A DNA stretch of 63,850 nt, the filler included, from Octopus bimaculoides (taxonomy: Eukaryota), in NCBI RefSeq assembly GCF_001194135.2. It is 6 parts of 6 records of this genome, joined end to end, with 100 filler letters (N's around TTAATTAATTAA, not from the genome) between each part and the next. Parts side by side here need not be neighbours in the genome. Positions count along the whole stretch, not along the records: positions 1 to 30,186 come from NC_068999.1; 5 more parts are not named here. One strand, 5' to 3'. Under the pieces are notes generated by a model. That model was not told the DNA's origin and did no database searches. It was given only the letters and a program-made list of their open reading frames with translations. Shown one piece after another: positions 921 to 20,888 of this stretch (the stretch's first letter is position 1; every line of letters starts with the position of its first letter). Both the position numbers and the translations under genes were made by a program.

Positions 921-951
<31 letters not shown>

Positions 952-1019
952 AAGAAGAAGAAGAAGAAGAAGAAGAAGAAGAAGAAGAAGAAGAAGAAGA
1001 AGAAGAAGAAGAAGAAGAA
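904..1019. repeat. Compound trinucleotide microsatellite (TAA)n-(GAA)n
   Basis: AAT run from 904, switching to an uninterrupted GAA run of about 95 bp. Confidence 0.97.
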
Positions 1020-1378: not shown

Positions 1379-1504
1379 TATATGTCTTAGTTTAAGAAGG
1401 GATAAAATTTAGATGATCATTCTATCGTTATGATTTACATCAACATATTAAATACATATAACATAAAATTAAAGCAAGACAAGGAACGTATTTTTTTCTA
1501 ATTT

Positions 1505-1705
1505 AGGCACAAGGCTCGAAATTTTCGGGGAGGGGGCCAGTCGACGAGATCGACTTCAGTCGCAACTGGTACTTAATTTATCGACTCCGAAAGGATGAAA
1601 GGCAAAGTCGACCTGGGCGAAACTTGAACTCAGAACATAGAGACAGACGAAATACCGTTAAACATTTTGCCGGGCAGGCTAACGTTTCTGCCAGCTCGCC
1701 GCCTT
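1505..1705 (-). mobile_element. tRNA-derived SINE, family A, full length
   Basis: Minus strand starts AAGGCGGCGAGCTGGCAGAAACGTTAGC (A-box-like), has GAGTTCAAGTTTC (B-box-like) and the central GTCGACTTTGCCTTTCATCCTTTCGGAGTCGATAAATTAAGTACCAG. It aligns by eye with more than 10 other copies in the window. Confidence 0.9.
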
Positions 1706-1916
1706 GAATATATATCTATATGTTGTTTAGAATATAAATAAAAAATTATATGAGTTAAATATANNNNNNNNNNNNNNNNNNNNNNNNNNNNNNNNNNNNN
1801 NNNNNNNNNNNNNNNNNNNNNNNNNNNNNNNNNNNNNNNNNNNNNNNNNNNNNNNNNNNNNNNNNNNNNNNNNNNNNNNNNNNNNNNNNNNNNNNNNNNN
1901 NNNNNNNNNNNNNNNN

Positions 1917-3020: not shown

Positions 3021-3111
3021 TGGTGGTGGTGGTGGTGGTGGTGGTGGGTGGATGGAGGTAAGCGCAAACACACAAGNNNNNNNNNNNNNNNNNNNNNNNN
3101 NNNNNNNNNNN

Positions 3112-3152
<41 letters not shown>

Positions 3153-3940
3153 ATACAGAAAGAAAGAGAGCGGGGTATGTAGATAAATAGATATGCAACT
3201 GTAGGAACATCTAAGTAATCGTGATAGTGTGCCTGTGTAGTTATATATGTGTTTCTGGATACAAGTGTGTGTGTCATGTGCGTGGTATATATATGTATGT
3301 TTATATATATATATATATAATATATGTTTATATATGTATGTATATATGTATGTCTGTGTGTATAGTTTTAGAGTTATAAATATACTTATAGACACAGAAA
3401 TATATATACATAAATACATGGATACAGTCACGTATGTACATACATGCATAGTCACATAGACATACAAACACATACATAAACTCATATAGCTAAAGATGCG
3501 ACAGAATCGAAAGCGTTGTTCGTTTCACACAAGTGCAATAAAGTCAATTGTTTGACATTTTTTAATGGGCAACCATGATGAACTAATGTTATCATGTGTT
3601 GTGAACTGAAACAAGTTAAAGCGGAAATTGAAATCTCATCACAAAATAGATGTATAGAAAAAAAAAACTGAAAATACAAGGCAGAAAAGTAACTACTGTA
3701 TATCATGCCTTACTTAGAAATACTAATGACAGTAATTAGATTAATGAGTTGTGAATCGCAAACTTGCTTCTTTTGTAAAGCTTAACTCTACACTGAGTGG
3801 CCAGTAACAACACAGTGTAACCATTTTTTTTTTGTTTTTTGGTTATTAAGTGTTATTTCCTAAGTGCTTCTATCCAGAAATCAAAGGAAATGACTACTAT
3901 TCCCTATTTTTCGTTTTATTTCAGATAGATTCAACGCTGA

Positions 3941-4020
3941 CTTCCTGAAACAGAATCTTCTAGAAATTTCAAAAGCTCTCGAGAAGTTTCGAAAAGTTTC
4001 AAGAATTTCTAGAACGTTCT
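3941..4020. promoter_or_regulatory. Heat-shock-element (nGAAn/nTTCn) array
   Basis: One 5-bp register has GAA 3953, TTC 3958, GAA 3963, TTC 3968, (aag 3973), (ctc 3978), GAA 3983, TTC 3988, (aaa 3993), TTC 3998, GAA 4003. A shifted register adds TTC 4007, GAA 4012, TTC 4017, and upstream there is TTC 3942/GAA 3947. Confidence 0.7.
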
Positions 4021-4037
4021 GGCAATATAGATGCCAG

Positions 4038-4044
4038 TATAAAT
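4038..4044 (+). promoter_or_regulatory. TATA box candidate downstream of the HSE array
   Basis: TATAAAT, 18 bp after the last TTC pentamer. A CCAGTT Inr-like motif lies at 4058-4063, with shorter spacing than canonical. Confidence 0.45.
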
Positions 4045-4207
4045 TACTTCTAGCTCTCCAGTTGTAGACAAGCTTGAAAAATCTTTCATATTGCTAGGGA
4101 TAAGCAAACAGGAAATGAAAGTGGCTACCCAAGGACAAAATCGTGTTACAGAGTGTAATTCTTTATAGTTTGAGAACAAGGTAATTGATATTGAGGACAT
4201 GGAGCAA

Positions 4208-4373
4208 GGCGGTTTCATCGAATCCAGCGTTCAACTAGCTCTTACTTTATCGCTCCGGATTGGATGGAAAGCAAAGTCGAACTCGACGGAATTTGAACTC
4301 AGAACGTAAGACCGGAAGAAATGCCGCTAAGCATTTTGCCTGACATGCTAATATTCGACCAGCTTGTCGATTT
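4208..4373 (-). mobile_element. SINE family A, diverged
   Basis: GGAATTTGAACTCAGAACGTAAGAC...AAATGCCGCTAAGCATTTTG matches 1505-1705. Confidence 0.85.
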
Positions 4374-4435
4374 CTATAGGGCATTAATTAAAATAATGAG
4401 CGTTTCTAATTTAAGCAAAACATCTGTAATATTGA

Positions 4436-4592
4436 TGAGTCGATTACGTCGAGCTTGACTAGTGCTTTATATTACAGACCCCCGAAAGAATGAAAGGCAA
4501 ATCAGTCTTGCCAAGGTTTGATCTCAGAATGTGAAAAGTCGGGACAAATACCATAAAGTATTTTGTCCAACGCTTTAATGATTCTGCCAATA
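4436..4592 (-). mobile_element. SINE family A, strongly diverged
   Basis: GACCCCCGAAAGAATGAAAGGCAAA...TTTGATCTCAGAATGT...GATTCTGCCAA. Confidence 0.7.
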
Positions 4593-4637
4593 TGGAACCC
4601 TTAACCATAACAATGATTGTTGCTGCTGTTGTTGTTT

Positions 4638-4825
4638 ATGTTTAGCTAAAGGACAGACCTGATTGAGCAGATATTTAATAAACGGCATTACAGATGTTCC
4701 TATCCTGTCTATTTTTCAAATATAGTGTATTTAGACCTATATTACTCAACAATTCTTCCTATTTTCATAACGGTAATTATAGATTTTGCTGTTATTTCTA
4801 GCAGGCCTAACAACTTCGCAGACAG
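4638..4825 (+). repeat. Unclassified interspersed repeat, family E/F
   Basis: 5' motif TTTAGCT...CTGATTGAGCAGA...GGCATT and 3' motif GATTTTGCTGTTATTTCTAGCAGG. These motifs recur at 5008-5080, 6260-6340, 19865-19960 (rc), 21425-21480, 21545-21770, 53945-54065 (rc), 58450-58530, 58850-59025 and 59290-59335. Strand is arbitrary. Confidence 0.6.
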
Positions 4826-6723: not shown

Positions 6724-7190
6724 GAACCAAGCAAAGAGCATATTCGTCACATTAAGCTTTACGAGTGTTATTGATGTTGCAATACAAACGAAGCAGCAAA
6801 AATGTTCAAAAGGCTTATGGCCAACATGCTGTAAATGAAAAAAGACGTTGCAGAAAGGCTCATGAAACAATTCTAGTTTTTTAAATGAGTTCAGAGTAAA
6901 ACATCCTTCATAATTGAATGAAGAGCTGCTAGAAGCAACACTTGCAAGGAATCCTGCTGTGATGATGAGAGGGCTTTCATCTCAATTTAATGTTAGTATT
7001 ATGGATATTCATAATCATTTGGAGAAGCAAGGAAACGTTTCAGGGTTTGAGAAACTGAAGTTGAGAAAAGGATTCTTTGCAGATATTTTAAGCGTTACAG
7101 ACAGCTGCTCAGCCCAAATCTAATATCCGGTGTTTCATTCACGAAGACAACTCCATTCAAAGAACAATTTATAGACGGTTTAGTGGAATA
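6724..7190 (+). pseudogene. Decayed mariner-family transposase, N-terminal HTH region
   Basis: Frameshifted translation EPSKEHIRHIKLYE / KNVQKAYGQHAVNEKRRCRK / NEELLEATLARNPAVMMRGLSSQFNVSIMDIHNHLEKQGNVS resembles mariner KEHIRH.LLYEF, AYG..AV.ER and NP..T.RELA..L.VS..TI..HL..GKV motifs. Confidence 0.75.
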
Positions 7191-9831: not shown

Positions 9832-10046
9832 TAGTATGTTTCACGAGAAAGTGAGGAGGGTTTGGTTGGGAAGAAAATAAAAGAATAAAAACACAAAGCT
9901 TCTAACATGAATCGGGTGGAGGTGCTAATATTTAAGGTCAAGAAGTTATTGCTAAAAAATAAAAAATGTTAAGATTTTAGTGTATATGGAGGGTCATTAG
10001 CTAGAACGAATCAGCATGTGTAAGCTTCTGATGTTTGGTGGTTACG

Positions 10047-10215
10047 GCAGTCAAGCATAACACCATGTGATCAACTAGTACTTATTTTATCGACCTCCTA
10101 AATGATGAAAGGCAAAGTCGATCTTGGCGGAATTTGAATTCAGAAGGTAAAGACGGACGAGATGCCTTTAAGAATTTTGTCCGGATTTCTAAAGATCCTG
10201 CCAGCTTACCATCTT
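10047..10215 (-). mobile_element. SINE family A
   Basis: TACTTATTTTATCGACC...GATGAAAGGCAAAGTCGATCTTGGCGGAATTTGAATTCAGAA. Confidence 0.85.
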
Positions 10216-12527
10216 ACTTCCACTTATTATTGACAAAGCAACATAGCTTTGCATGTATATAATTTTTCAATGCTGTTGAACAAGTTTTAAAAGTTTTAAA
10301 TCATCTTAATTTTATTACACGTAGGAATTTATCAACATACTTTTCCAATCTCTACATGTCCACCGTCTATGAGAAATTTTAATCTAGGATAACCCGGTGT
10401 CTAGACGCGCTTTGTCCTAGATACGGTGACGGCGGTGTTCCATTGATGACGAACTATAGACGGATATACAGAATATATATAAAACATATTGTTAGCATGG
10501 ACACACCTTCCTTGTTAGTACCAGTACAAATAAAAAAGAAAAATAACATTTGAAACTTTAAAGAGTTCGATACAAAATTACGTTGAAATTGTGAGTTAGG
10601 TAAATGTTAGAACACTATATCTTTCTCTCTCTCCCCCTCCCCCTCTCTCTCTCTCTCTCTCTCTCACTCTCTTTCTCTCTATCTATCTACCTAACTTTTC
10701 CTTCAAGTGTCTCGAACTAAAACAACAATGAACATTATTCTTCTTTGAGAAGAAAACAAAATGATTGAAAACAGTTTCAATACTTGTATAGAAGATAAAT
10801 TGTTTTTTTATATAGCTTGTGTTGTTATTATTGTTCTTCTTGTTGTCACTGTAGTTGTTATTGCTGTTGTAGTAACTGTTAAACATCTTTATAAATAGGA
10901 AATTGCTTCATATATGGAAATGTAAATTGTTCTGTACTTTTTTGTTACTTATATACTTTTCTTTTGTGTTTTCTTTATCTCTTAAATGCATCTTTTGGTT
11001 CTTCGTTTCTTTGTTTATGTCCGACAATTCGATATTACGGAGTTCGGGTTAAAAATCTACATATTGCCCCCACACCCACTACTCTTGCTATCTCCTCCGA
11101 CCCTTTTAATCAGAGAATTGCTGCAATTCCTTTATTGTATATATGTCCTCTTGTTTGTTTACTCTTTTTTGTTTCTTTGGCTTGATTTGAACATTTTTTC
11201 CGCTTAAAAAATGTGTACACACACATACACACGTGTGTGTGTATTTATGAGTGTGTGTGTATGTACTTTTATACATACATACATGCATACATACATACGT
11301 ACATACATGTATCAGCACATATGCAGACATAGATCTATATGCATACATACATACATACAATACAAAACAGAGAGTATCTATCGTTTCATTTCTTTTTTCT
11401 CTTTTTTCGCTTTCATTTTGTTTTGCTTACGTCCTGTCCGGGTCTTAAGAGTTCACTCCCCTATACATGTCCCAAAAAATTTACAAATAGATTAAATAGA
11501 TACCACAAAATTGAAATATTCTAATCGATTTTCAAAGCAAATCAACAAACGTTACGATTAATCTCTAATTTTAGTTTTCAATTTTTTATTTCATTTTCTT
11601 TTTTATCTTGTAATTCTGTTAGTGTATTTTTGTTTTTGCAGTTTTGTGTTTCTTTAGCTTCTTTTTATTTTTTTTCCTTGTTTTGTTTTGTTTTGGGGAT
11701 TTTTGTTTTTCATTTTTTTAACAATTTTTTTCTTTCATATTGTATAGAATTTAGGTAAATTATAGGAAACAAAAACTTTTATCGTTGACTTGTTAAGCGA
11801 CTTCAATTAATGTGAGATTTATCTGAGACTATTGTTGTATTCTTTTTATCTTCTGTTGGCGGCAAAGTTTGCAATGATTGATGGTAGGAGATTAATATTT
11901 CACACAGTAAATGGCGAAACTGAGACTAACAACATAGGAGAGAAGATGGCAAACAATACAAAACAATAATGACGGTTTTATTACAATGGGACAAGAATTA
12001 AAGAAAAAGAGAGATAGCGGTGAGAGCTAATGGGAATCGGTTGTGTTAATGCTTTTCCAAAGGCCATTATTGTGCGTGGAGCAATTTCTATTGGTTGGGT
12101 GTAATTACTTAGCTCTATATCTGGCTTCTAAATCATTTCCAGGGACACTAACTCAGATTATTACGGCAATTTTCAACTTCCTTTTGTGTTCTTTCTCGTT
12201 TAAGAGAACGCCAGACCTATAACGGTGATGAGTTGGTGGAAAACAATGGCGGGCTGAATTTACATAGCATGCATATTTACTCACATATGCGTACGTTACG
12301 AGTTCTAATCTTCACGGATTTGGATATACCTTTCCTGCTTCATTAAATTTGTCCAGCTAAAACACTAAATTCACCGTTATAATACCATTTTTCATGGATA
12401 TTACAATGCGTTTACTGATATTTGAAATCAATTTTCGGTTTATAGAATTGTCGTAGAATGGGTGTTGTTTCCCTGGTTTTCTTTCAGATTTTATTTCAAA
12501 ATATATATTTAACTTTTCTTTGCGGTG

Positions 12528-12632: not shown

Positions 12633-15600
12633 TTGAAAGTATTATTGGTTGACGAAAATGCTATTATGTTAAATTACCGTATGTCCAAATTTGGCGAAAT
12701 GCGTTTTTTAAATATTTATTTTTGCTTGCAATAGCTGGTTCTTTTGGTCAGACTATCGTATCTTCAGCTGCTTCAGACGCCAAGATATCAAAAACTATCA
12801 AAGTGTAGTTCAACAGTTTTGCTATCGAATGGTGAGAGTATTTTTCGTTTTCTGAAAAAGCAACGTTTTGGACTTACCACTCTTTTGCATAAGAGCAACG
12901 ATATATATATATATATATATTTATATNNNNNNNNNNNNNNNNNNNNNNNNNNNNNNNNNNNNNNNNNNNNNNNNNNNNNNNNNNNNNNNNNNNNNNNNNN
13001 NNNNNNNNNNNNNNNNNNNNNNNNNNNNNNNNNNNNNNNNNNNNNNNNNNNNNNNNNNNNNNNNNNNNNNNNNNNNNNNNNNNNNNNNNNNNNNNNNNNN
13101 NNNNNNNNNNNNNNNNNNNNNNNNNNNNNNNNNNNNNNNNNNNNNNNNNNNNNNNNNNNNNNNNNNNNNNNNNNNNNNNNNNNNNNNNNNNNNNNNNNNN
13201 NNNNNNNNNNNNNNNNNNNNNNNNNNNNNNNNNNNNNNNNNNNNNNNNNNNNNNNNNNNNNNNNNNNNNNNNNNNNNNNNNNNNNNNNNNNNNNNNNNNN
13301 NNNNNNNNNNNNNNNNNNNNNNNNNNNNNNNNNNNNNNNNNNNNNNNNNNNNNNNNNNNNNNNNNNNNNNNNNNNNNNNNNNNNNNNNNNNNNNNNNNNN
13401 NNNNNNNNNNNNNNNNNNNNNNNNNNNNNNNNNNNNNNNNNNNNNNNNNNNNNNNNNNNNNNNNNNNNNNNNNNNNNNNNNNNNNNNNNNNNNNNNNNNN
13501 NNNNNNNNNNNNNNNNNNNNNNNNNNNNNNNNNNNNNNNNNNNNNNNNNNNNNNNNNNNNNNNNNNNNNNNNNNNNNNNNNNNNNTATATATATATATAT
13601 ATATAAAGTCTTGGATCTATATATACATCCGAGATTGTAAGGAATGGAACAGGTAAAACACGGACTACGTTTCAAAGCTAAAACAATATTTGTTACATAA
13701 GCTGTAACACGTGTGGAACCAGTTAAGCTTAGGTACTCTTCAGGTCCTATTGTCTATATAAGTTATTTACATTGTCGCGTGGAGATGAAGAAATGAATTA
13801 TGAAACTAGCCATGAAATGAATGGCGAGTTAAAAACAGAAAAAAAAGAAGAAAAGAAACAAATCAACATCAAATGAGCAATGAAAGTAGGAATGAATGTT
13901 AGTGGGTTGGTCGCCCTAAAAGGGACCGAGATGGGTGCATTTATATAAGCCATTAACTAAAAGGAGAAGGCTGCAAAGTAAAGAGGTAGGGAGGACTAGC
14001 AATAAAATTCCTTTAGTGTATTCCAATAATTCATCGAAGTTAGCTGTCTGGAATTTTTACTCTATCAGTCTCTTGCCATCTCCATGACGCCTAAATGTAA
14101 TGATAGGTTTGGTGGTGGGAGGGTAGCGTTAAGCCAATGTGTTAGATCTAACGCTAGTGATACTTGTTACAAAATCTTCACTGCACAAAAATTTAATCCG
14201 TCTTTCCGGTCTTCCCAATCAATGTGAAGCTGTTATCTAAGCAAGCAATCATCACGTGAAGATTCTTCATTTAATCGTTTTGTTGGCTTACTACACATGA
14301 TGAAGTATGTATCTGTACATACATACATACATACATACATACATACATACATACATACATACAAACATACAGACAGACAGACAGACAGACAGATAGACAG
14401 ACAAAGAGTGTATATAGATCGTTCCGTGTGTGCATGCTTGCATACGTAACTTTGATCGCTTTTACTTAGGATTTTCAATATCTCCTCATAAAGTCCTTCA
14501 TGTATGGTATGGAACAGTAAACTTCCTACAGTCATTAGTCTCACATTTTGAGATTTTCACGATCTGAATTTCAATACATAGACAAATGTTAATGGCGTGT
14601 GTCCGCGAGTTTTTCAGTAATTGTTAATGGGTTTCGGGAATAATTTTACAGCTGATAAGATCATCAACGCCGGACTTAACGCTGAAAACATGGACAAAGC
14701 ACCATTAAAACACTTAATTTTGAAAATTAGCCTATGAAAGACAGGAAACGTCAGATTAATAGATTTATGACAATTATTGTTCCTAATCAAGCGGAAAGAA
14801 CTAATAAACATCAAAAATTGTAAAATATATCAAACTAGAACATAGTCGTGTTTTTAACATAAAATTATTGAGATAAATGTAGTTCCATAATCACACATAT
14901 GCACACGCAAATGCATGTATACACGTACATATATATACATATGCATACACACGCACGCACACGCACGCACACATACACACATATATGCGCGTCTTCTACA
15001 CGGTTGCTGCTTACCTATTAAATTCACTCACACGGCATAGGTCAACATGGGGATAATAATAGAAGAGACACTAACGCAAGGTTTTATCTGCTATGTATAA
15101 TTTATAGGTTAACATTTTTCATCCATTTCTGTTTTATAGATATGTAAAGCATTTGACACAAAAACGCATGAATTTTTAGTTTCTAAAATAAGTTTAGTCA
15201 CTAGTTTTGACATGAACTTGTATTGCAAATTCAACTGATTTTGGCATTCATGCCAAAGTTGGTTGAATTTTTATGTATTTGTGCAGTAAGAGATTCTTGG
15301 AAATAGCTGACACATAAATACACAAGATTTTTAGTTCCTGAAACAAAGAAAAATACAATTTTGACTAATACTTTTGACGAAGTCTTCTATTGCAGATAAG
15401 ACTACTTTTGTCATTTTATTTTATAGATATAAAAATCCTGGATTCGTGGAAATATTCATGAAACACAAAAGTGCACACGTTCTTAGTATCTAAAGCACGA
15501 AAGTAATCTGGATAGGCATTTTAGCTGCTTCAACGTATTTCAATTTTCAGTTGAAGGAAATTATATAAAAAAAGAAAAAAACAATAAACTTAAGCTGTAT

Positions 15601-15798
15601 ATATTGCATTAAAGCTATGATCATTGACATTTACAGCTAACTTAATCCGCACTGGGTGGGTTGCAGAGATTTTCATAAGAATAGAAAAGGTAAGATTCTA
15701 TTGTTGTGATTGTATTGATTCTGTTTTCGTCTTCAAAAGCTTTGCATGGTATTTACTCAGCAGTCCAACGGCGGTTTTTCCCTCTCTTTCTGTCTCTG

Positions 15799-15858
<60 letters not shown>

Positions 15859-16020
15859 AGTCTCTATCACTTTCTCTCTTTATCTCTCTCTCTCTCCCCC
15901 TCTCTCTCACACATACATTCAGTCTTTCTTTTATAATGAACTCAAACTCGGTGAAGTTTAGAATTCTTGTATACAATGAACTTATATGACGTTATTAAAA
16001 TAAGCGTCGCGCGCGCGCGC

Positions 16021-17519: not shown

Positions 17520-17535
17520 TGTAGATAGATAGATT

Positions 17536-17616
<81 letters not shown>

Positions 17617-17633
17617 ATAGATAGGCAGGTAGG

Positions 17634-17664
<31 letters not shown>

Positions 17665-17665
17665 G

Positions 17666-17740
<75 letters not shown>

Positions 17741-18620: not shown

Positions 18621-19293
18621 ATGGTATGGAATACAGCTTATTGCACATGTAGCATGCCCCTACCACCACCACCACCACCACCAATACATTACTCATGGAT
18701 CCAAAGGAATAGTACGGGTGTTATAATTCGGAATCGGTCATGTCGCAGATGTTAACAGAACGAAGTTGTAGACAACGTCAAACTGAGTCAGAGGTTCCGA
18801 CTCCTTATTTTTCTTCGGACTTTACTCCCGATGTCTTCCCCGTGGTTAAATATGGTCACAAGAGAGCAGAGTTTTGAAACAGGATTTTCCTTAGATTTGT
18901 TGCACCCCAGGATAACGAACTCCATCTGACCGACTAACTTGCTAATTAACACATAGCTCGAACTCCGACAGGGTAAACTTCGGATAAATTAGTAGCCCTG
19001 AAGTAGTCCCACACTCCTCAAAACCTTGGACCTCCCGAATGAGGCGTGTGGAACTATTGAACAGTGTTGTAGTAATGCGTTAAAAACACTACTTGATTAT
19101 TCCATGATGCGGCATCATGTTGTATCATTACACATTTCAGCAATAATGCAGTAACGTGTTATCAACACAACTGTCATACGCCACACTGCAGTATCTTTGT
19201 ATACTTCTGCACTATCGATTTCTAACTTAATCAAATGGATTGGAAAATCGGGGTGAGGGGAACAGTGAAGCATATTAATATCAGAATATCACG

Positions 19294-19507
19294 AGGGCGA
19301 CGACCCAGCAGAATTATTTGCACGCCGGAAAAAATGCCGAGAGGCAGTTCGTTTGTATTTACGTTCTGAGTTCAAATTCCACCAAACACGACTTTGCCTT
19401 TCAGCCATTCAGGGATCAATAAACTAAGTACCAACTGAATACTGTGGTCGATATAATTGACTCATCCTCTTCCATGAAATTGCTGATCTTGTGCCAACAT
19501 TTGAAGT
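19294..19507 (+). mobile_element. SINE family A, full length, diverged
   Basis: TTACGTTCTGAGTTCAAATTCC (B box), GACTTTGCCTTTCAGCCATTCAGGGATCAATAAACTAAGTACCA, CTTGTGCCAACATTTGAA. Confidence 0.85.
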
Positions 19508-19672: not shown

Positions 19673-20000
19673 AAGAACATTACCAGCAGCGGACACCATT
19701 GAAATATTAGACACAGTGATTGTAATGACTTTCATACAATTAATCGTTAATGTAATCATGTATTATTGCAGTTATTTACCGTCACATTAATATACTTGGA
19801 TGAAACAGTTGTAACCTCCCACTTACACATATATAGCCATGAGCTAACAGTAACGGAGGGTCTCCGAAGTCGACCAGACTGTAAGAAATAGCAACTGAAT
19901 CTTTCCTATCTAACATCATTTTGCCTAAACAAGGACAGTGCATATTTGATAGGTCTAGATATATCCTGTGGCGACTCGATGAGGTAGCGAAAATGCTGCT

Positions 20001-20290
20001 TTGGAAACTGAAAACTTGGGGGTAGAGAAAGGCAAGACGTGGTATGAGCACAAACCACAGAGAGTGGTTGAGTCAGAAACCTGCAAAATCCTGTGGAATT
20101 TCCAAATCCAAACAGACCAGGTGCTTGAGCACAACCAGCCAGATGTAGTGGTGGTGAACAAGGTGAAGTACATGTTCTATATAAATGTTGTTGCGTGTCC
20201 TTCGACCCACGTATGGTTAAGAAGGAAGGTGAAAATGGACATACAAAATCCTCTTAAATACGCGATAGCTCGACTGCTGCTGAGCATTTG
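20001..20290 (+). pseudogene. R4/Dong-clade non-LTR retrotransposon, restriction-like endonuclease region
   Basis: WYEHKPQRVVESETCKILWNFQIQTDQVLEHNQPDVVVVNK...VACP matches the WYEH.P..V.EN...KILWDF.IQTD..I..R.PDIVV pattern of R4/Dong ORFs. Confidence 0.8.
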
Positions 20291-20297
20291 CCAGGCC

Positions 20298-20400: not shown

Positions 20401-20412
20401 AAGAAGATAATA
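20298..20412. repeat. (TAA)n-(GAA)n-(TAA)n microsatellite
   Basis: Direct reading. It lies between the R4/Dong fragment and a SINE 3' end. Confidence 0.95.
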
Positions 20413-20414
20413 AT

Positions 20415-20631
20415 AATCCTTTCTTCTGGAAGCACAAGGCCTCAGATTTGGGGAAAGGGATTAAGTCGATTACATCGACCCCAGTGCATAACTGGTACTA
20501 ATTTTATCGACCCAGAAAGGATGAAAGGCAAAGTCGACCTCGTCGGAATTTGAACTCAGAACGTAACGGCAGACGAAATACCGCTAAACATTTCGCACAG
20601 CGCGCTAACGATTCTGCCATCTCGCCGCCTT
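20415..20631 (-). mobile_element. SINE family A, full length, relatively well conserved
   Basis: AGCACAAGGCC...GTCGATTACATCGACCCCAGT...AAAGGATGAAAGGCAAAGTCGACCTCGTCGGAATTTGAACTCAGAACG...TCGCCGCCTT, with a (TTA)n tail on the sense strand. Confidence 0.92.
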
Positions 20632-20639
20632 CATATATA

Positions 20640-20676
<37 letters not shown>

Positions 20677-20678
<2 letters not shown>

Positions 20679-20888
20679 CCTTTCTGCTATAAGCACAAGG
20701 CCGGGAATTTGAGGGAAGAGGGATAGTCGATCACATCGACCCTAGTACTTGACTGCTACTTGATTTATCGACTCCGGAAGTAAGAAAGTCAGTCGAGCTC
20801 GGCGGAGTTTGAACTCAGAGCGTAAAGACAGGGGAAATATCACTAAGCATTTCACCCGGCGCTAACGTTTCTGCCCGCTCGCCGCCTT
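20677..20888 (-). mobile_element. SINE family A, full length, tandem with the previous copy
   Basis: Same motifs. Its tail is the (TAA)n run at 20637-20677. Confidence 0.9.

What the first reader, a model, noticed from the sequence alone, without database searches (positions are those of the whole stretch)
3789..4200. Very long heat-shock-element array followed by a TATA box, possibly a stress-inducible transposon promoter
Seen: about 16 nGAAn/nTTCn pentamers in 80 bp, 13 of them perfect, in registers of 11, 3 and 2, then TATAAAT 18 bp downstream. Established: HSF trimers bind three or more alternating nGAAn units cooperatively, and TE-borne HSEs are known (ONSEN in Arabidopsis, Helitrons in Caenorhabditis). 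Inference: TA|CACTGAGTGGCCA at 3789 resembles a Tc1-type end, and 4095-4200 could be a decayed transposase start cut off by a SINE. If so, a transposon family may be spreading heat-shock promoters in an ectotherm genome. No hsp gene follows.
Basis: partly seen in the sequence, partly recalled or inferred. Interest (0 to 1): 0.72.

Follow-up and report, generated by a model that had tools for sequence, protein, structure and literature searches.

The report
Orphan heat-shock-type promoter beside SINEs
A dense, genuine cluster of heat-shock-factor binding motifs sits just upstream of a TATA box, so it looks like a heat-inducible promoter, but no heat-shock gene or transposase follows it and nothing tested supports the idea that it belongs to a transposon.

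Summary
Positions 3942-4021 carry 16 nGAAn/nTTCn pentamers, 13 of them perfect, in registers of 2, 11 and 3 units. TATAAAT lies 18 bp downstream at 4038-4044, with a CA/Inr-like start at about 4060-4070. Eight perfect units in one 11-unit register never arose in 200 simulated 30-kb sequences, where the maximum was 5.

The transposon reading is not supported, though it is not refuted:
- The "Tc1-type end" at 3791 has no inverted partner in the window.
- The region has no second copy within 30 kb.
- Nothing in it resembles a transposase.
- The SINE begins at about 4150, not 4200, so the "decayed transposase start" shrinks to 15 open codons.

No hsp70, sHSP, DnaJ or other Pfam-recognisable exon lies on the + strand in the 26 kb downstream.

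My best reading is an HSF-responsive, TATA-dependent Pol II promoter. Its about 90-nt leader now runs into two sense-oriented SINE copies, and its product is unknown. The rivals are a functionless degenerate 10/20-bp minisatellite and a transposon-borne promoter.

The decisive tests could not be run. This is an ordinary kind of element in an unusual dose, of moderate to low interest.

The parts
3789..3811 (+). I treat it as ordinary unique sequence.
   Evidence: No partner on either strand with up to 3 mismatches. No inverted match longer than 13 nt by blastn-short.
3900..3932 (.). Four TTC triplets at exact 10-bp steps (3900, 3910, 3920, 3930) with no GAA between them. They may be decayed or step-type units, and they are out of phase with the main array.
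   Evidence: Significance was not tested and the region is T-rich.
3941..3951 (.). Distal 2-unit HSE register (TTC 3942, GAA 3947).
3952..4006 (.). Main HSE register of 11 contiguous alternating pentamers, 8 perfect and 3 imperfect (AAG, CTC, AAA). It could hold about 3 HSF trimers. It carries a trace of a 20-bp (4-unit) tandem duplication.
   Evidence: TRF reports period 10 (3.4 copies, 76% match) and period 20 (2.3 copies, 78% match) at 3965-4009.
4006..4021 (.). Proximal perfect 3-unit HSE (TTCtaGAAcgTTC), shifted by -1 nt relative to the main register.
   Evidence: perfect TTCnnGAAnnTTC at 4007.
4038..4044 (+). TATA box, TATAAAT.
   Evidence: Frequency of TATAAAW is 0.73 per kb.
4058..4071 (+). 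Predicted transcription start zone. It contains the Inr-like CCAGTT (A at 4060, 22 nt from the TATA box) and CA at 4069/4070 (32 nt from the TATA box).
   Evidence: Read from the sequence and inferred from metazoan core-promoter rules. Not tested.
4072..4149 (+). Unique A-rich leader. It holds a short open frame from ATG 4105 (MKVATQGQNRVTECN...) that stays open up to the SINE junction and stops inside the SINE head at 4156-4158.
   Evidence: No Pfam or protein-database similarity.
4150..4400 (+). SINE copy 1, sense orientation, full head (ttctttatagtttgagAACAAGGT...) and an A/T-rich tail.
   Evidence: 73-79% identity to other copies at 1563-1682, 10071-10179, 19315-19428(-) and 20448-20596. 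Alignment, head comparison.
4401..4640 (+). SINE copy 2, sense orientation, older (67-71% identity to other copies). It abuts the tail of copy 1.
   Evidence: No target-site duplication was recoverable.
4677..4682 (+). First AATAAA after the SINEs. If used, the transcript would be an unspliced RNA of about 0.6 kb that contains both SINEs.
   Evidence: Sequence only. Speculative.

Best explanation
Positions 3942-4071 form a heat-shock-factor-responsive, TATA-dependent RNA polymerase II promoter pointing rightwards. On proteotoxic stress, HSF trimers would bind cooperatively to the 11-unit and 3-unit runs of inverted nGAAn pentamers, with room for four to five trimers. They would then drive initiation about 25-32 nt downstream of TATAAAT, at about 4060-4070.

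The transcription unit is not a recognisable hsp gene. An A-rich leader of about 90 nt runs into two sense-oriented SINE copies inserted at about 4150 and 4401. The product is therefore one of three things: a non-coding or SINE-containing RNA, the non-coding first exon of a gene whose coding exons were not recognised or lie outside the window, or the stranded promoter of a gene that no longer exists.

Shown: the motif architecture, its non-randomness, the SINE insertions, and the absence of hsp or transposase coding sequence.
Inferred: HSF binding, heat inducibility, the start site and the nature of the product.
For: - Sixteen units, 13 perfect, in registers of 2, 11 and 3.
- Eight perfect units in one 11-unit register, against a maximum of 5 in 200 simulated 30-kb sequences. 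All three perfect trimeric HSEs of the window lie here.
- TATAAAT sits 18 nt after the last unit, with a chance of about 0.02. That is the spacing of classical hsp promoters (established knowledge).
- The spacer bases between triplets differ from unit to unit (TC, TA, AT, AA, CT, GA, GT...). The plain 10-bp minisatellites that match the same skeleton elsewhere look different: (GGGAATTTTC)n and (GGAAGGTTCC)n.
- A precedes GAA in 7 of 8 perfect GAA units, which fits the extended AGAAn preference (read by eye).
Against: - No recognisable heat-shock or other coding exon of 33 aa or more on the + strand in 26 kb downstream, nor on the - strand upstream (Pfam; tblastn with recalled HSPA1A, HSPB1, DNAJB1 and ubiquitin).
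- No identical annotated exon in the protein collection. This is a weak test, because the two transposon-derived ORFs added as positive controls also gave nothing.
- No known RNA family or tRNA.
- Part of the array looks like a 20-bp tandem duplication, so fewer than 16 units are independent.
- The conserved flanking bases follow a direct-repeat pattern (AGAAn / TTTCn) rather than strict dyad symmetry.
- No expression, binding or conservation data could be obtained.
Confidence: 0.5

Rival explanations
1. The array is a degenerate 10/20-bp minisatellite whose unit happens to be GAAnnTTCnn. It arose by replication slippage, and its nearness to a TATAAAT in AT-rich DNA is a coincidence. It has no regulatory role.
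For: - TRF finds period 10 (3.4 copies, 76% match) and period 20 (2.3 copies, 78% match) at 3965-4009.
- The window is packed with micro- and minisatellites.
- The same 33-base skeleton occurs elsewhere as plain 10-bp minisatellites.
- No gene is found downstream.
Against: - Only about 45 of the 80 bp are scored as tandem repeat, and only weakly. The flanking TTCTAGAA units and the distal pair are not part of it.
- Spacers are heterogeneous while the triplets are kept. There is an ascertainment caveat here: the array was found by its triplets.
- A TATA box at canonical distance has a chance of about 0.02.
- Whatever its origin, such a sequence is by definition a strong HSF binding site.
Confidence: 0.22
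2. One reading: 3789-4150 is the 5' end of a Tc1/mariner-type or other transposon that carries its own heat-shock promoter. It was truncated by SINE insertion, and a family of such elements spreads HSEs through the genome.
For: - TE-borne HSEs are known. Examples are ONSEN LTRs and Caenorhabditis Helitrons, in which 61% of C. elegans HSEs reside and which often carry tandem overlapping HSEs (PMC6927752).
- An orphan promoter with no host gene is what a dead transposon would leave behind.
- TA precedes CACTG at 3789.
Against: - No terminal inverted repeat partner in 30 kb.
- No second copy of any part of 3786-4200 in the window.
- No transposase, RT or integrase domain on the + strand downstream.
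- The nearest mariner-looking stretch (6759-7120) is 2.7 kb away and not significant (tblastn E 0.64; no Pfam hit).
- Six-frame pieces of 3760-4175 hit nothing among 5.8 billion proteins.
- The "transposase start" is 15 codons followed by SINE head.
- PMC6927752 found no dense HSE clusters in bilaterians outside Caenorhabditis.
Confidence: 0.13
3. It is the stranded promoter of a former hsp gene, for example an hsp70 paralogue. The coding region was lost by deletion or rearrangement, much as the hsp70-promoter-bearing alpha-gamma elements at Drosophila 87C drive non-hsp sequence.
For: - The architecture is that of a strong inducible hsp promoter.
- hsp70 families commonly duplicate and decay (general knowledge).
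- The downstream sequence is riddled with SINE insertions.
Against: - Not even a fragmentary HSP70, sHSP or DnaJ match at E of 10 or better in the whole window, apart from noise.
- No sequence from this species' hsp promoters could be fetched for comparison.
Confidence: 0.1

Closest known systems
Classical inducible hsp promoters (Drosophila hsp70 and hsp83, vertebrate HSPA1A)
   Same: Contiguous inverted nGAAn pentamers immediately upstream of a TATA box, with the last HSE about 15-20 nt from TATA. The leader is A-rich.
   Different: No hsp coding sequence follows. The array (11 + 3 + 2 units in 80 bp) is longer than most: from memory, hsp83 has about 8 contiguous units and hsp70 has several separate 3-4-unit HSEs. 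The leader is interrupted by SINEs after about 90 nt.
Helitron-acquired HSE clusters in Caenorhabditis (PMC6927752)
   Same: Dense, tandem, overlapping HSEs lie outside hsp genes and can make neighbouring genes heat-responsive.
   Different: Those clusters sit in identifiable multi-copy Helitrons and may hold tens to more than 100 HSEs. Here there are no Helitron or other TE hallmarks, a single copy in 30 kb, and the array has its own TATA box.
ONSEN (ATCOPIA78) LTR heat-shock elements in Arabidopsis
   Same: HSEs and a core promoter together in one compact unit that could drive a mobile element's transcript.
   Different: ONSEN HSEs lie in paired LTRs that flank gag-pol. Here there is no LTR pair and no RT or integrase domain on the + strand downstream.
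HSF1-driven non-coding transcription units (human satellite III, Drosophila hsr-omega and the 87C alpha-gamma repeats)
   Same: An HSF-type promoter leads into repetitive, non-protein-coding sequence.
   Different: Those are experimentally shown to be transcribed. Here transcription is untested, and the downstream repeats are two SINE copies rather than a satellite.
10-bp minisatellites of GAAnnTTCnn type (loci L001 and L002)
   Same: They match the same 33-base HSE skeleton, including the register shift.
   Different: They are uniform repeats of one unit, (GGGAATTTTC)n and (GGAAGGTTCC)n, tens of copies long and with no TATA box at the end. The array here has heterogeneous spacers and only weak periodic identity.

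Membership tests
HSF-dependent (heat-shock) promoter | At least three contiguous inverted nGAAn pentamers at 5-bp pitch | tested here: met
   Runs of 11 units (8 perfect), 3 (all perfect) and 2.
HSF-dependent (heat-shock) promoter | Core promoter (TATA and initiator) within a few tens of bp downstream of the proximal HSE | tested here: met
   TATAAAT at 4038-4044, 18 nt after the array. CA/Inr-like sites at 4060 and 4070.
HSF-dependent (heat-shock) promoter | HSF occupancy and heat-induced initiation | not testable with these tools
No ChIP data are available.
HSF-dependent (heat-shock) promoter | A chaperone or other identifiable gene downstream | tested here: not met
   No Pfam hit for + strand ORFs of 33 aa or more in 4000-30186. 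tblastn with HSP70, HSPB1, DNAJB1 and ubiquitin was negative. No protein-database hit.
Tc1/mariner DNA transposon | Terminal inverted repeats flanked by a TA duplication | tested here: not met
   No inverted partner of 3786-3835 in the window. The right end could lie outside only if the element exceeded 26 kb.
Tc1/mariner DNA transposon | DDE/D transposase ORF or its remnants | tested here: not met
   No Pfam hit. tblastn with a recalled Hsmar1 transposase gave a best E of 0.53-0.64. Of 4095-4200, 55 nt are unique sequence and the rest is SINE head.
Tc1/mariner DNA transposon | Multiple dispersed copies in the genome | not testable with these tools
   Only this 30-kb piece is available, and within it there is a single copy. 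Six-frame pieces hit nothing in the protein collection.
LTR retrotransposon with HSE-bearing LTR (ONSEN-like) | Two LTR copies flanking gag-pol, or a solo LTR bounded by TG...CA with a target duplication | tested here: inconclusive
   No second copy and no RT, RNase H or integrase on the + strand, which argues against a full element. A solo LTR cannot be excluded without other genomic copies.
Helitron carrying HSE clusters | 5' TC and 3' CTRR ends with a subterminal hairpin, a Rep/helicase, and multiple copies | not tested
   The ends cannot be defined from one copy. No helicase or Rep domain was found among the + strand ORFs scanned.
Simple 10-bp minisatellite | Head-to-tail copies of one unit with uniform identity at all positions | tested here: inconclusive
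   TRF reports 3.4 copies at 76% (period 10) and 2.3 copies at 78% (period 20) over 45 of the 80 bp. Spacer positions n1 and n3 differ in nearly every unit.

The most novel reading that the evidence does not exclude
The HSE-TATA module is the promoter of a mobile or formerly mobile element family, of unknown class. That family would have scattered strong heat-shock promoters through this SINE-rich genome, which I think is a cephalopod's. Alternatively, it is a host promoter that makes a SINE-containing non-coding RNA on heat stress, a Pol II analogue of satellite III or hsr-omega transcripts.
Probability: 0.15. Interest if true: 0.65.

Novelty: new member of a known kind. Interest (0 to 1): 0.3.

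Why it matters
If the promoter is active, it marks an unannotated heat-inducible transcription unit with no chaperone product, in an animal group where the heat-shock regulon is barely mapped. If it proved multi-copy, it would be a third independent case, after ONSEN and the Caenorhabditis Helitrons, of mobile DNA distributing HSF sites, and the first in a mollusc. As it stands, it is a single well-formed HSE/TATA module of unknown output. It is useful mainly as a candidate for heat-shock RNA-seq or CAGE follow-up, or as a compact inducible promoter for transgenesis in that species.

Tried and rejected
2. Exact look-ups of five window ORFs in the assembly collection, to fetch the same or orthologous loci: none is on record.
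3. Protein-collection search with concatenated six-frame pieces of 3760-4175, to detect other copies: no hit.
Because the controls also failed, the search only excludes identical annotated exons.
5. Pfam on + strand downstream and - strand upstream ORFs: nothing but a spurious DUF3915 hit.
6. tblastn with recalled HSP70, HSPB1, DNAJB1 and ubiquitin sequences: noise only.
7. A mariner-like impression at 6759-7120: not significant, so I rejected it as evidence.
8. The splice donor AAG|GTAATT at 4179, which I first took for the end of a non-coding exon 1. It lies in the conserved SINE head (CACAAGGCC...), so it is not evidence for an exon.
9. Hairpin or cruciform idea for the palindromic array: z-score -1.44, not significant.
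10. Target-site duplications around the SINEs, to rebuild the empty site: none found.
11. Rfam and tRNA scans: nothing.
12. HSE-skeleton scans of the viral and metagenome collections: 0 hits and 2 unrelated minisatellites.
13. Literature searches for cephalopod HSEs or Tc1/mariner elements with HSEs: nothing specific.
14. The whole-window repeat finder: swamped by microsatellites and uninformative.

Full report
**Context.** The piece (1-30186) is AT-rich eukaryotic DNA, about 30-40% G+C. It is crowded with micro- and minisatellites and contains assembly gaps (N runs). It holds at least seven copies of one SINE of about 200-250 nt. From memory, that SINE resembles the tRNA-derived SINEs that fill octopus genomes. 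I could not verify the organism with the tools at hand.

**Observation.** Reading 3900-4080 gives perfect triplets in three registers.
- Two-unit register: TTC 3942 and GAA 3947.
- Eleven-unit register: GAA 3953, TTC 3958, GAA 3963, TTC 3968, GAA 3983, TTC 3988, TTC 3998 and GAA 4003. The imperfect units are AAG 3973, CTC 3978 and AAA 3993.
- Three-unit register: TTC 4007, GAA 4012 and TTC 4017. It is shifted by one base because GAAtTTC at 4003-4009 has a 1-nt spacer.

TATAAAT lies at 4038-4044, 18 nt after the last unit.

The array is far beyond chance.
- The best 11-unit register in the window has 8 perfect units. In 200 Markov-simulated 30-kb sequences the best had 3 to 5.
- The only three perfect trimeric HSEs in the window are all inside the array.
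- TATAAAW occurs 0.73 times per kb on the + strand, so one in the 30-nt slot just downstream has a chance of about 0.02.
- A minimal initiator lies at the right distance: CA at 4069/4070, 32 nt from the first T of the TATA box. An Inr-like CCAGTT is also present, with A at 4060.

**Anatomy of the array.** TRF scores 3965-4009 as a weak tandem repeat: period 10 with 3.4 copies at 76% match, and period 20 with 2.3 copies at 78%. Part of the 11-unit run therefore probably grew by duplication of a 4-unit block. Two TTCTAGAA palindromes (3958 and 4007) bracket it. The dinucleotide spacers differ from unit to unit, while A precedes GAA in 7 of the 8 perfect GAA units.

The single-strand hairpin that the palindromic array can form is not unusual for its composition (z = -1.44). 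Upstream, TTC recurs at 3900, 3910, 3920 and 3930 without intervening GAA. These may be decayed units, and I give them little weight.

**What follows the promoter.** Alignment with the other SINE copies shows that the SINE head begins at about 4150: consensus cctttct.ctataagCACAAGGCc.gaaattt.gggga..., here ttctttatagtttgagAACAAGGTaattgatattgagga. Three things follow from this.
- Only 4045-4149 is unique leader sequence.
- The attractive splice donor AAG|GTAATT at 4179 is simply the conserved SINE head.

A second, older SINE copy follows directly at 4401 to about 4640. No target-site duplications are recoverable. The first AATAAA after the SINEs is at 4677-4682.

**Is there a gene?**
- All + strand ORFs of 33 aa or more from 4000 to 30186, and all - strand ORFs upstream of 4100, gave no credible Pfam match.
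- tblastn with recalled HSPA1A, HSPB1, DNAJB1 and ubiquitin sequences gave only noise.
- Rfam and ARAGORN found nothing in the whole piece.
- A protein-collection search with the + strand ORFs of 38 aa or more (4600-29200) found nothing. The two transposon-derived ORFs that I added as positive controls also scored nothing. That search therefore excludes only identical annotated exons, and only if the species' proteome is in the collection.

**Is it a transposon?**
- The 21-mer at 3791 has no other match on either strand with up to 3 mismatches.
- Short-word BLAST of 3786-3835 finds no inverted partner longer than 13 nt.
- Region 3786-4200 has no other copy in the window except its own palindromic self-match.
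- Six-frame pieces of 3760-4175 hit nothing among the 5.8 billion clustered proteins.
- A stretch at 6759-7120 (+) looked to me like a mariner HTH region. It is not significant (tblastn E = 0.64; no Pfam hit), and it lies 2.7 kb away, too far for a mariner leader.
- There is no LTR pair and no RT or integrase on the + strand.

None of the defining features of Tc1/mariner, LTR or Helitron elements that could be tested was met. The key feature, copy number in the genome, could not be tested.

**A control from elsewhere.** I scanned for the array's own skeleton: 33 fixed bases, including the one-base register shift. The scan found nothing in viral contigs and two loci in metagenome contigs. Both are plain 10-bp minisatellites, (GGGAATTTTC)n and (GGAAGGTTCC)n, and are unrelated to this locus. 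They show that slippage alone can generate HSE-like periodicity, which keeps the minisatellite rival alive. They also show what such arrays look like: uniform units, tens of copies, and no TATA box. This one differs on all three counts.

**Mechanism.** By established knowledge of HSF, each trimer contacts three inverted nGAAn units, and adjacent trimers bind cooperatively. The 11-unit and 3-unit runs should therefore bind four to five trimers with very high affinity. A TATA box 18 nt downstream is the arrangement of classical inducible hsp promoters. I therefore commit to an HSF-responsive Pol II promoter firing rightwards from about 4060-4070 (confidence about 0.5). Its product is unknown. 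The possibilities are:
- a SINE-containing non-coding RNA of about 0.6 kb ending near 4700;
- the first non-coding exon of a gene with unrecognised or distant coding exons;
- a stranded promoter.

**Comparison with what is known.** The element works like a classical hsp promoter, with an unusually long HSE run. Dense HSE clusters outside hsp genes are known from Caenorhabditis Helitrons. The authors of that study report no such clusters in the other bilaterians they examined (PMC6927752). HSE-bearing LTRs are known from ONSEN. Membership in either TE class is not supported here.

**Verdict.** The transposon reading is unsupported but not refuted. This is a new instance of a known kind of element, and its interest is moderate to low until copy number and heat-shock expression are measured.

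Noticed in passing
window 1478-1700, 4150-4400, 4401-4640, 10040-10230, 19290-19470 (-), 20403-20630, 20664-20860: At least seven copies of one SINE family of about 200-250 nt. The head is cctttctgctataagCACAAGGCC..., the core is ...GGCAAAGTCGACCTCGGCGGAATTTGAACTCAGAACG..., and the tail is often followed by (AAT)n or (ATA)n. Copies are 67-83% identical to each other. Two pairs are tandem: 4150/4401 and 20403/20664.
   Followed up: partly
window 26943-27284 (-): An ORF with the motif ...CPSMYIGQTGRRLDHRFAEH... gives a weak GIY-YIG hit, below Pfam's cut-off (E = 0.012). It looks like the endonuclease domain of a decayed Penelope-like retroelement. Neighbouring - strand ORFs (27435-27912) may belong to it.
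   Followed up: partly
window 19983-20297 (+): A 105-aa ORF containing ...CKILWNFQIQTDQVLEHNQPDVVVVNK.... It reminds me of the C-terminal region of non-LTR retrotransposon ORF2 proteins common in molluscs. It has no Pfam hit and no protein-database hit.
   Followed up: partly
window 6759-7120 (+): Two adjacent ORF pieces (ALRVLLMLQYKRSSKNVQKAYGQHAVNEK... and LNEELLEATLARNPAVMMRGLSSQFNVSIMDIHNHLEKQGNV...) look by eye like the paired HTH region of a mariner transposase. Neither tblastn (E = 0.64) nor Pfam supports this.
   Followed up: yes
window 3900-3932: TTC at exact 10-bp steps (3900, 3910, 3920, 3930) just upstream of the HSE array and out of phase with it. These may be decayed HSE units or chance in a T-rich stretch.
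   Followed up: no
window 1764-1916, 3077-3111, 12927-13585: Runs of N (assembly gaps), each flanked by (TA)n microsatellite. This suggests a short-read scaffold assembly that broke in TA repeats.
   Followed up: no
window 922-1019, 17522-17739, 29347-29769, 15782-15908, 25594-25708: Very long pure microsatellites: (AAG)32, (TAGA)54, (AGAG)61 followed by (CAGA)37, (CT)63 and (TG)57. Their density is unusually high for a 30-kb stretch.
   Followed up: no
L001 467-533 and L002 120-345 (metagenome contigs Ga0126342_10002820 and PJEL010063778.1): Long 10-bp minisatellites, (GGGAATTTTC)n and (GGAAGGTTCC)n. Formally they are perfect HSE arrays tens of units long in unidentified, probably eukaryotic, DNA. 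L001 is flanked by further minisatellites with other units.
   Followed up: partly
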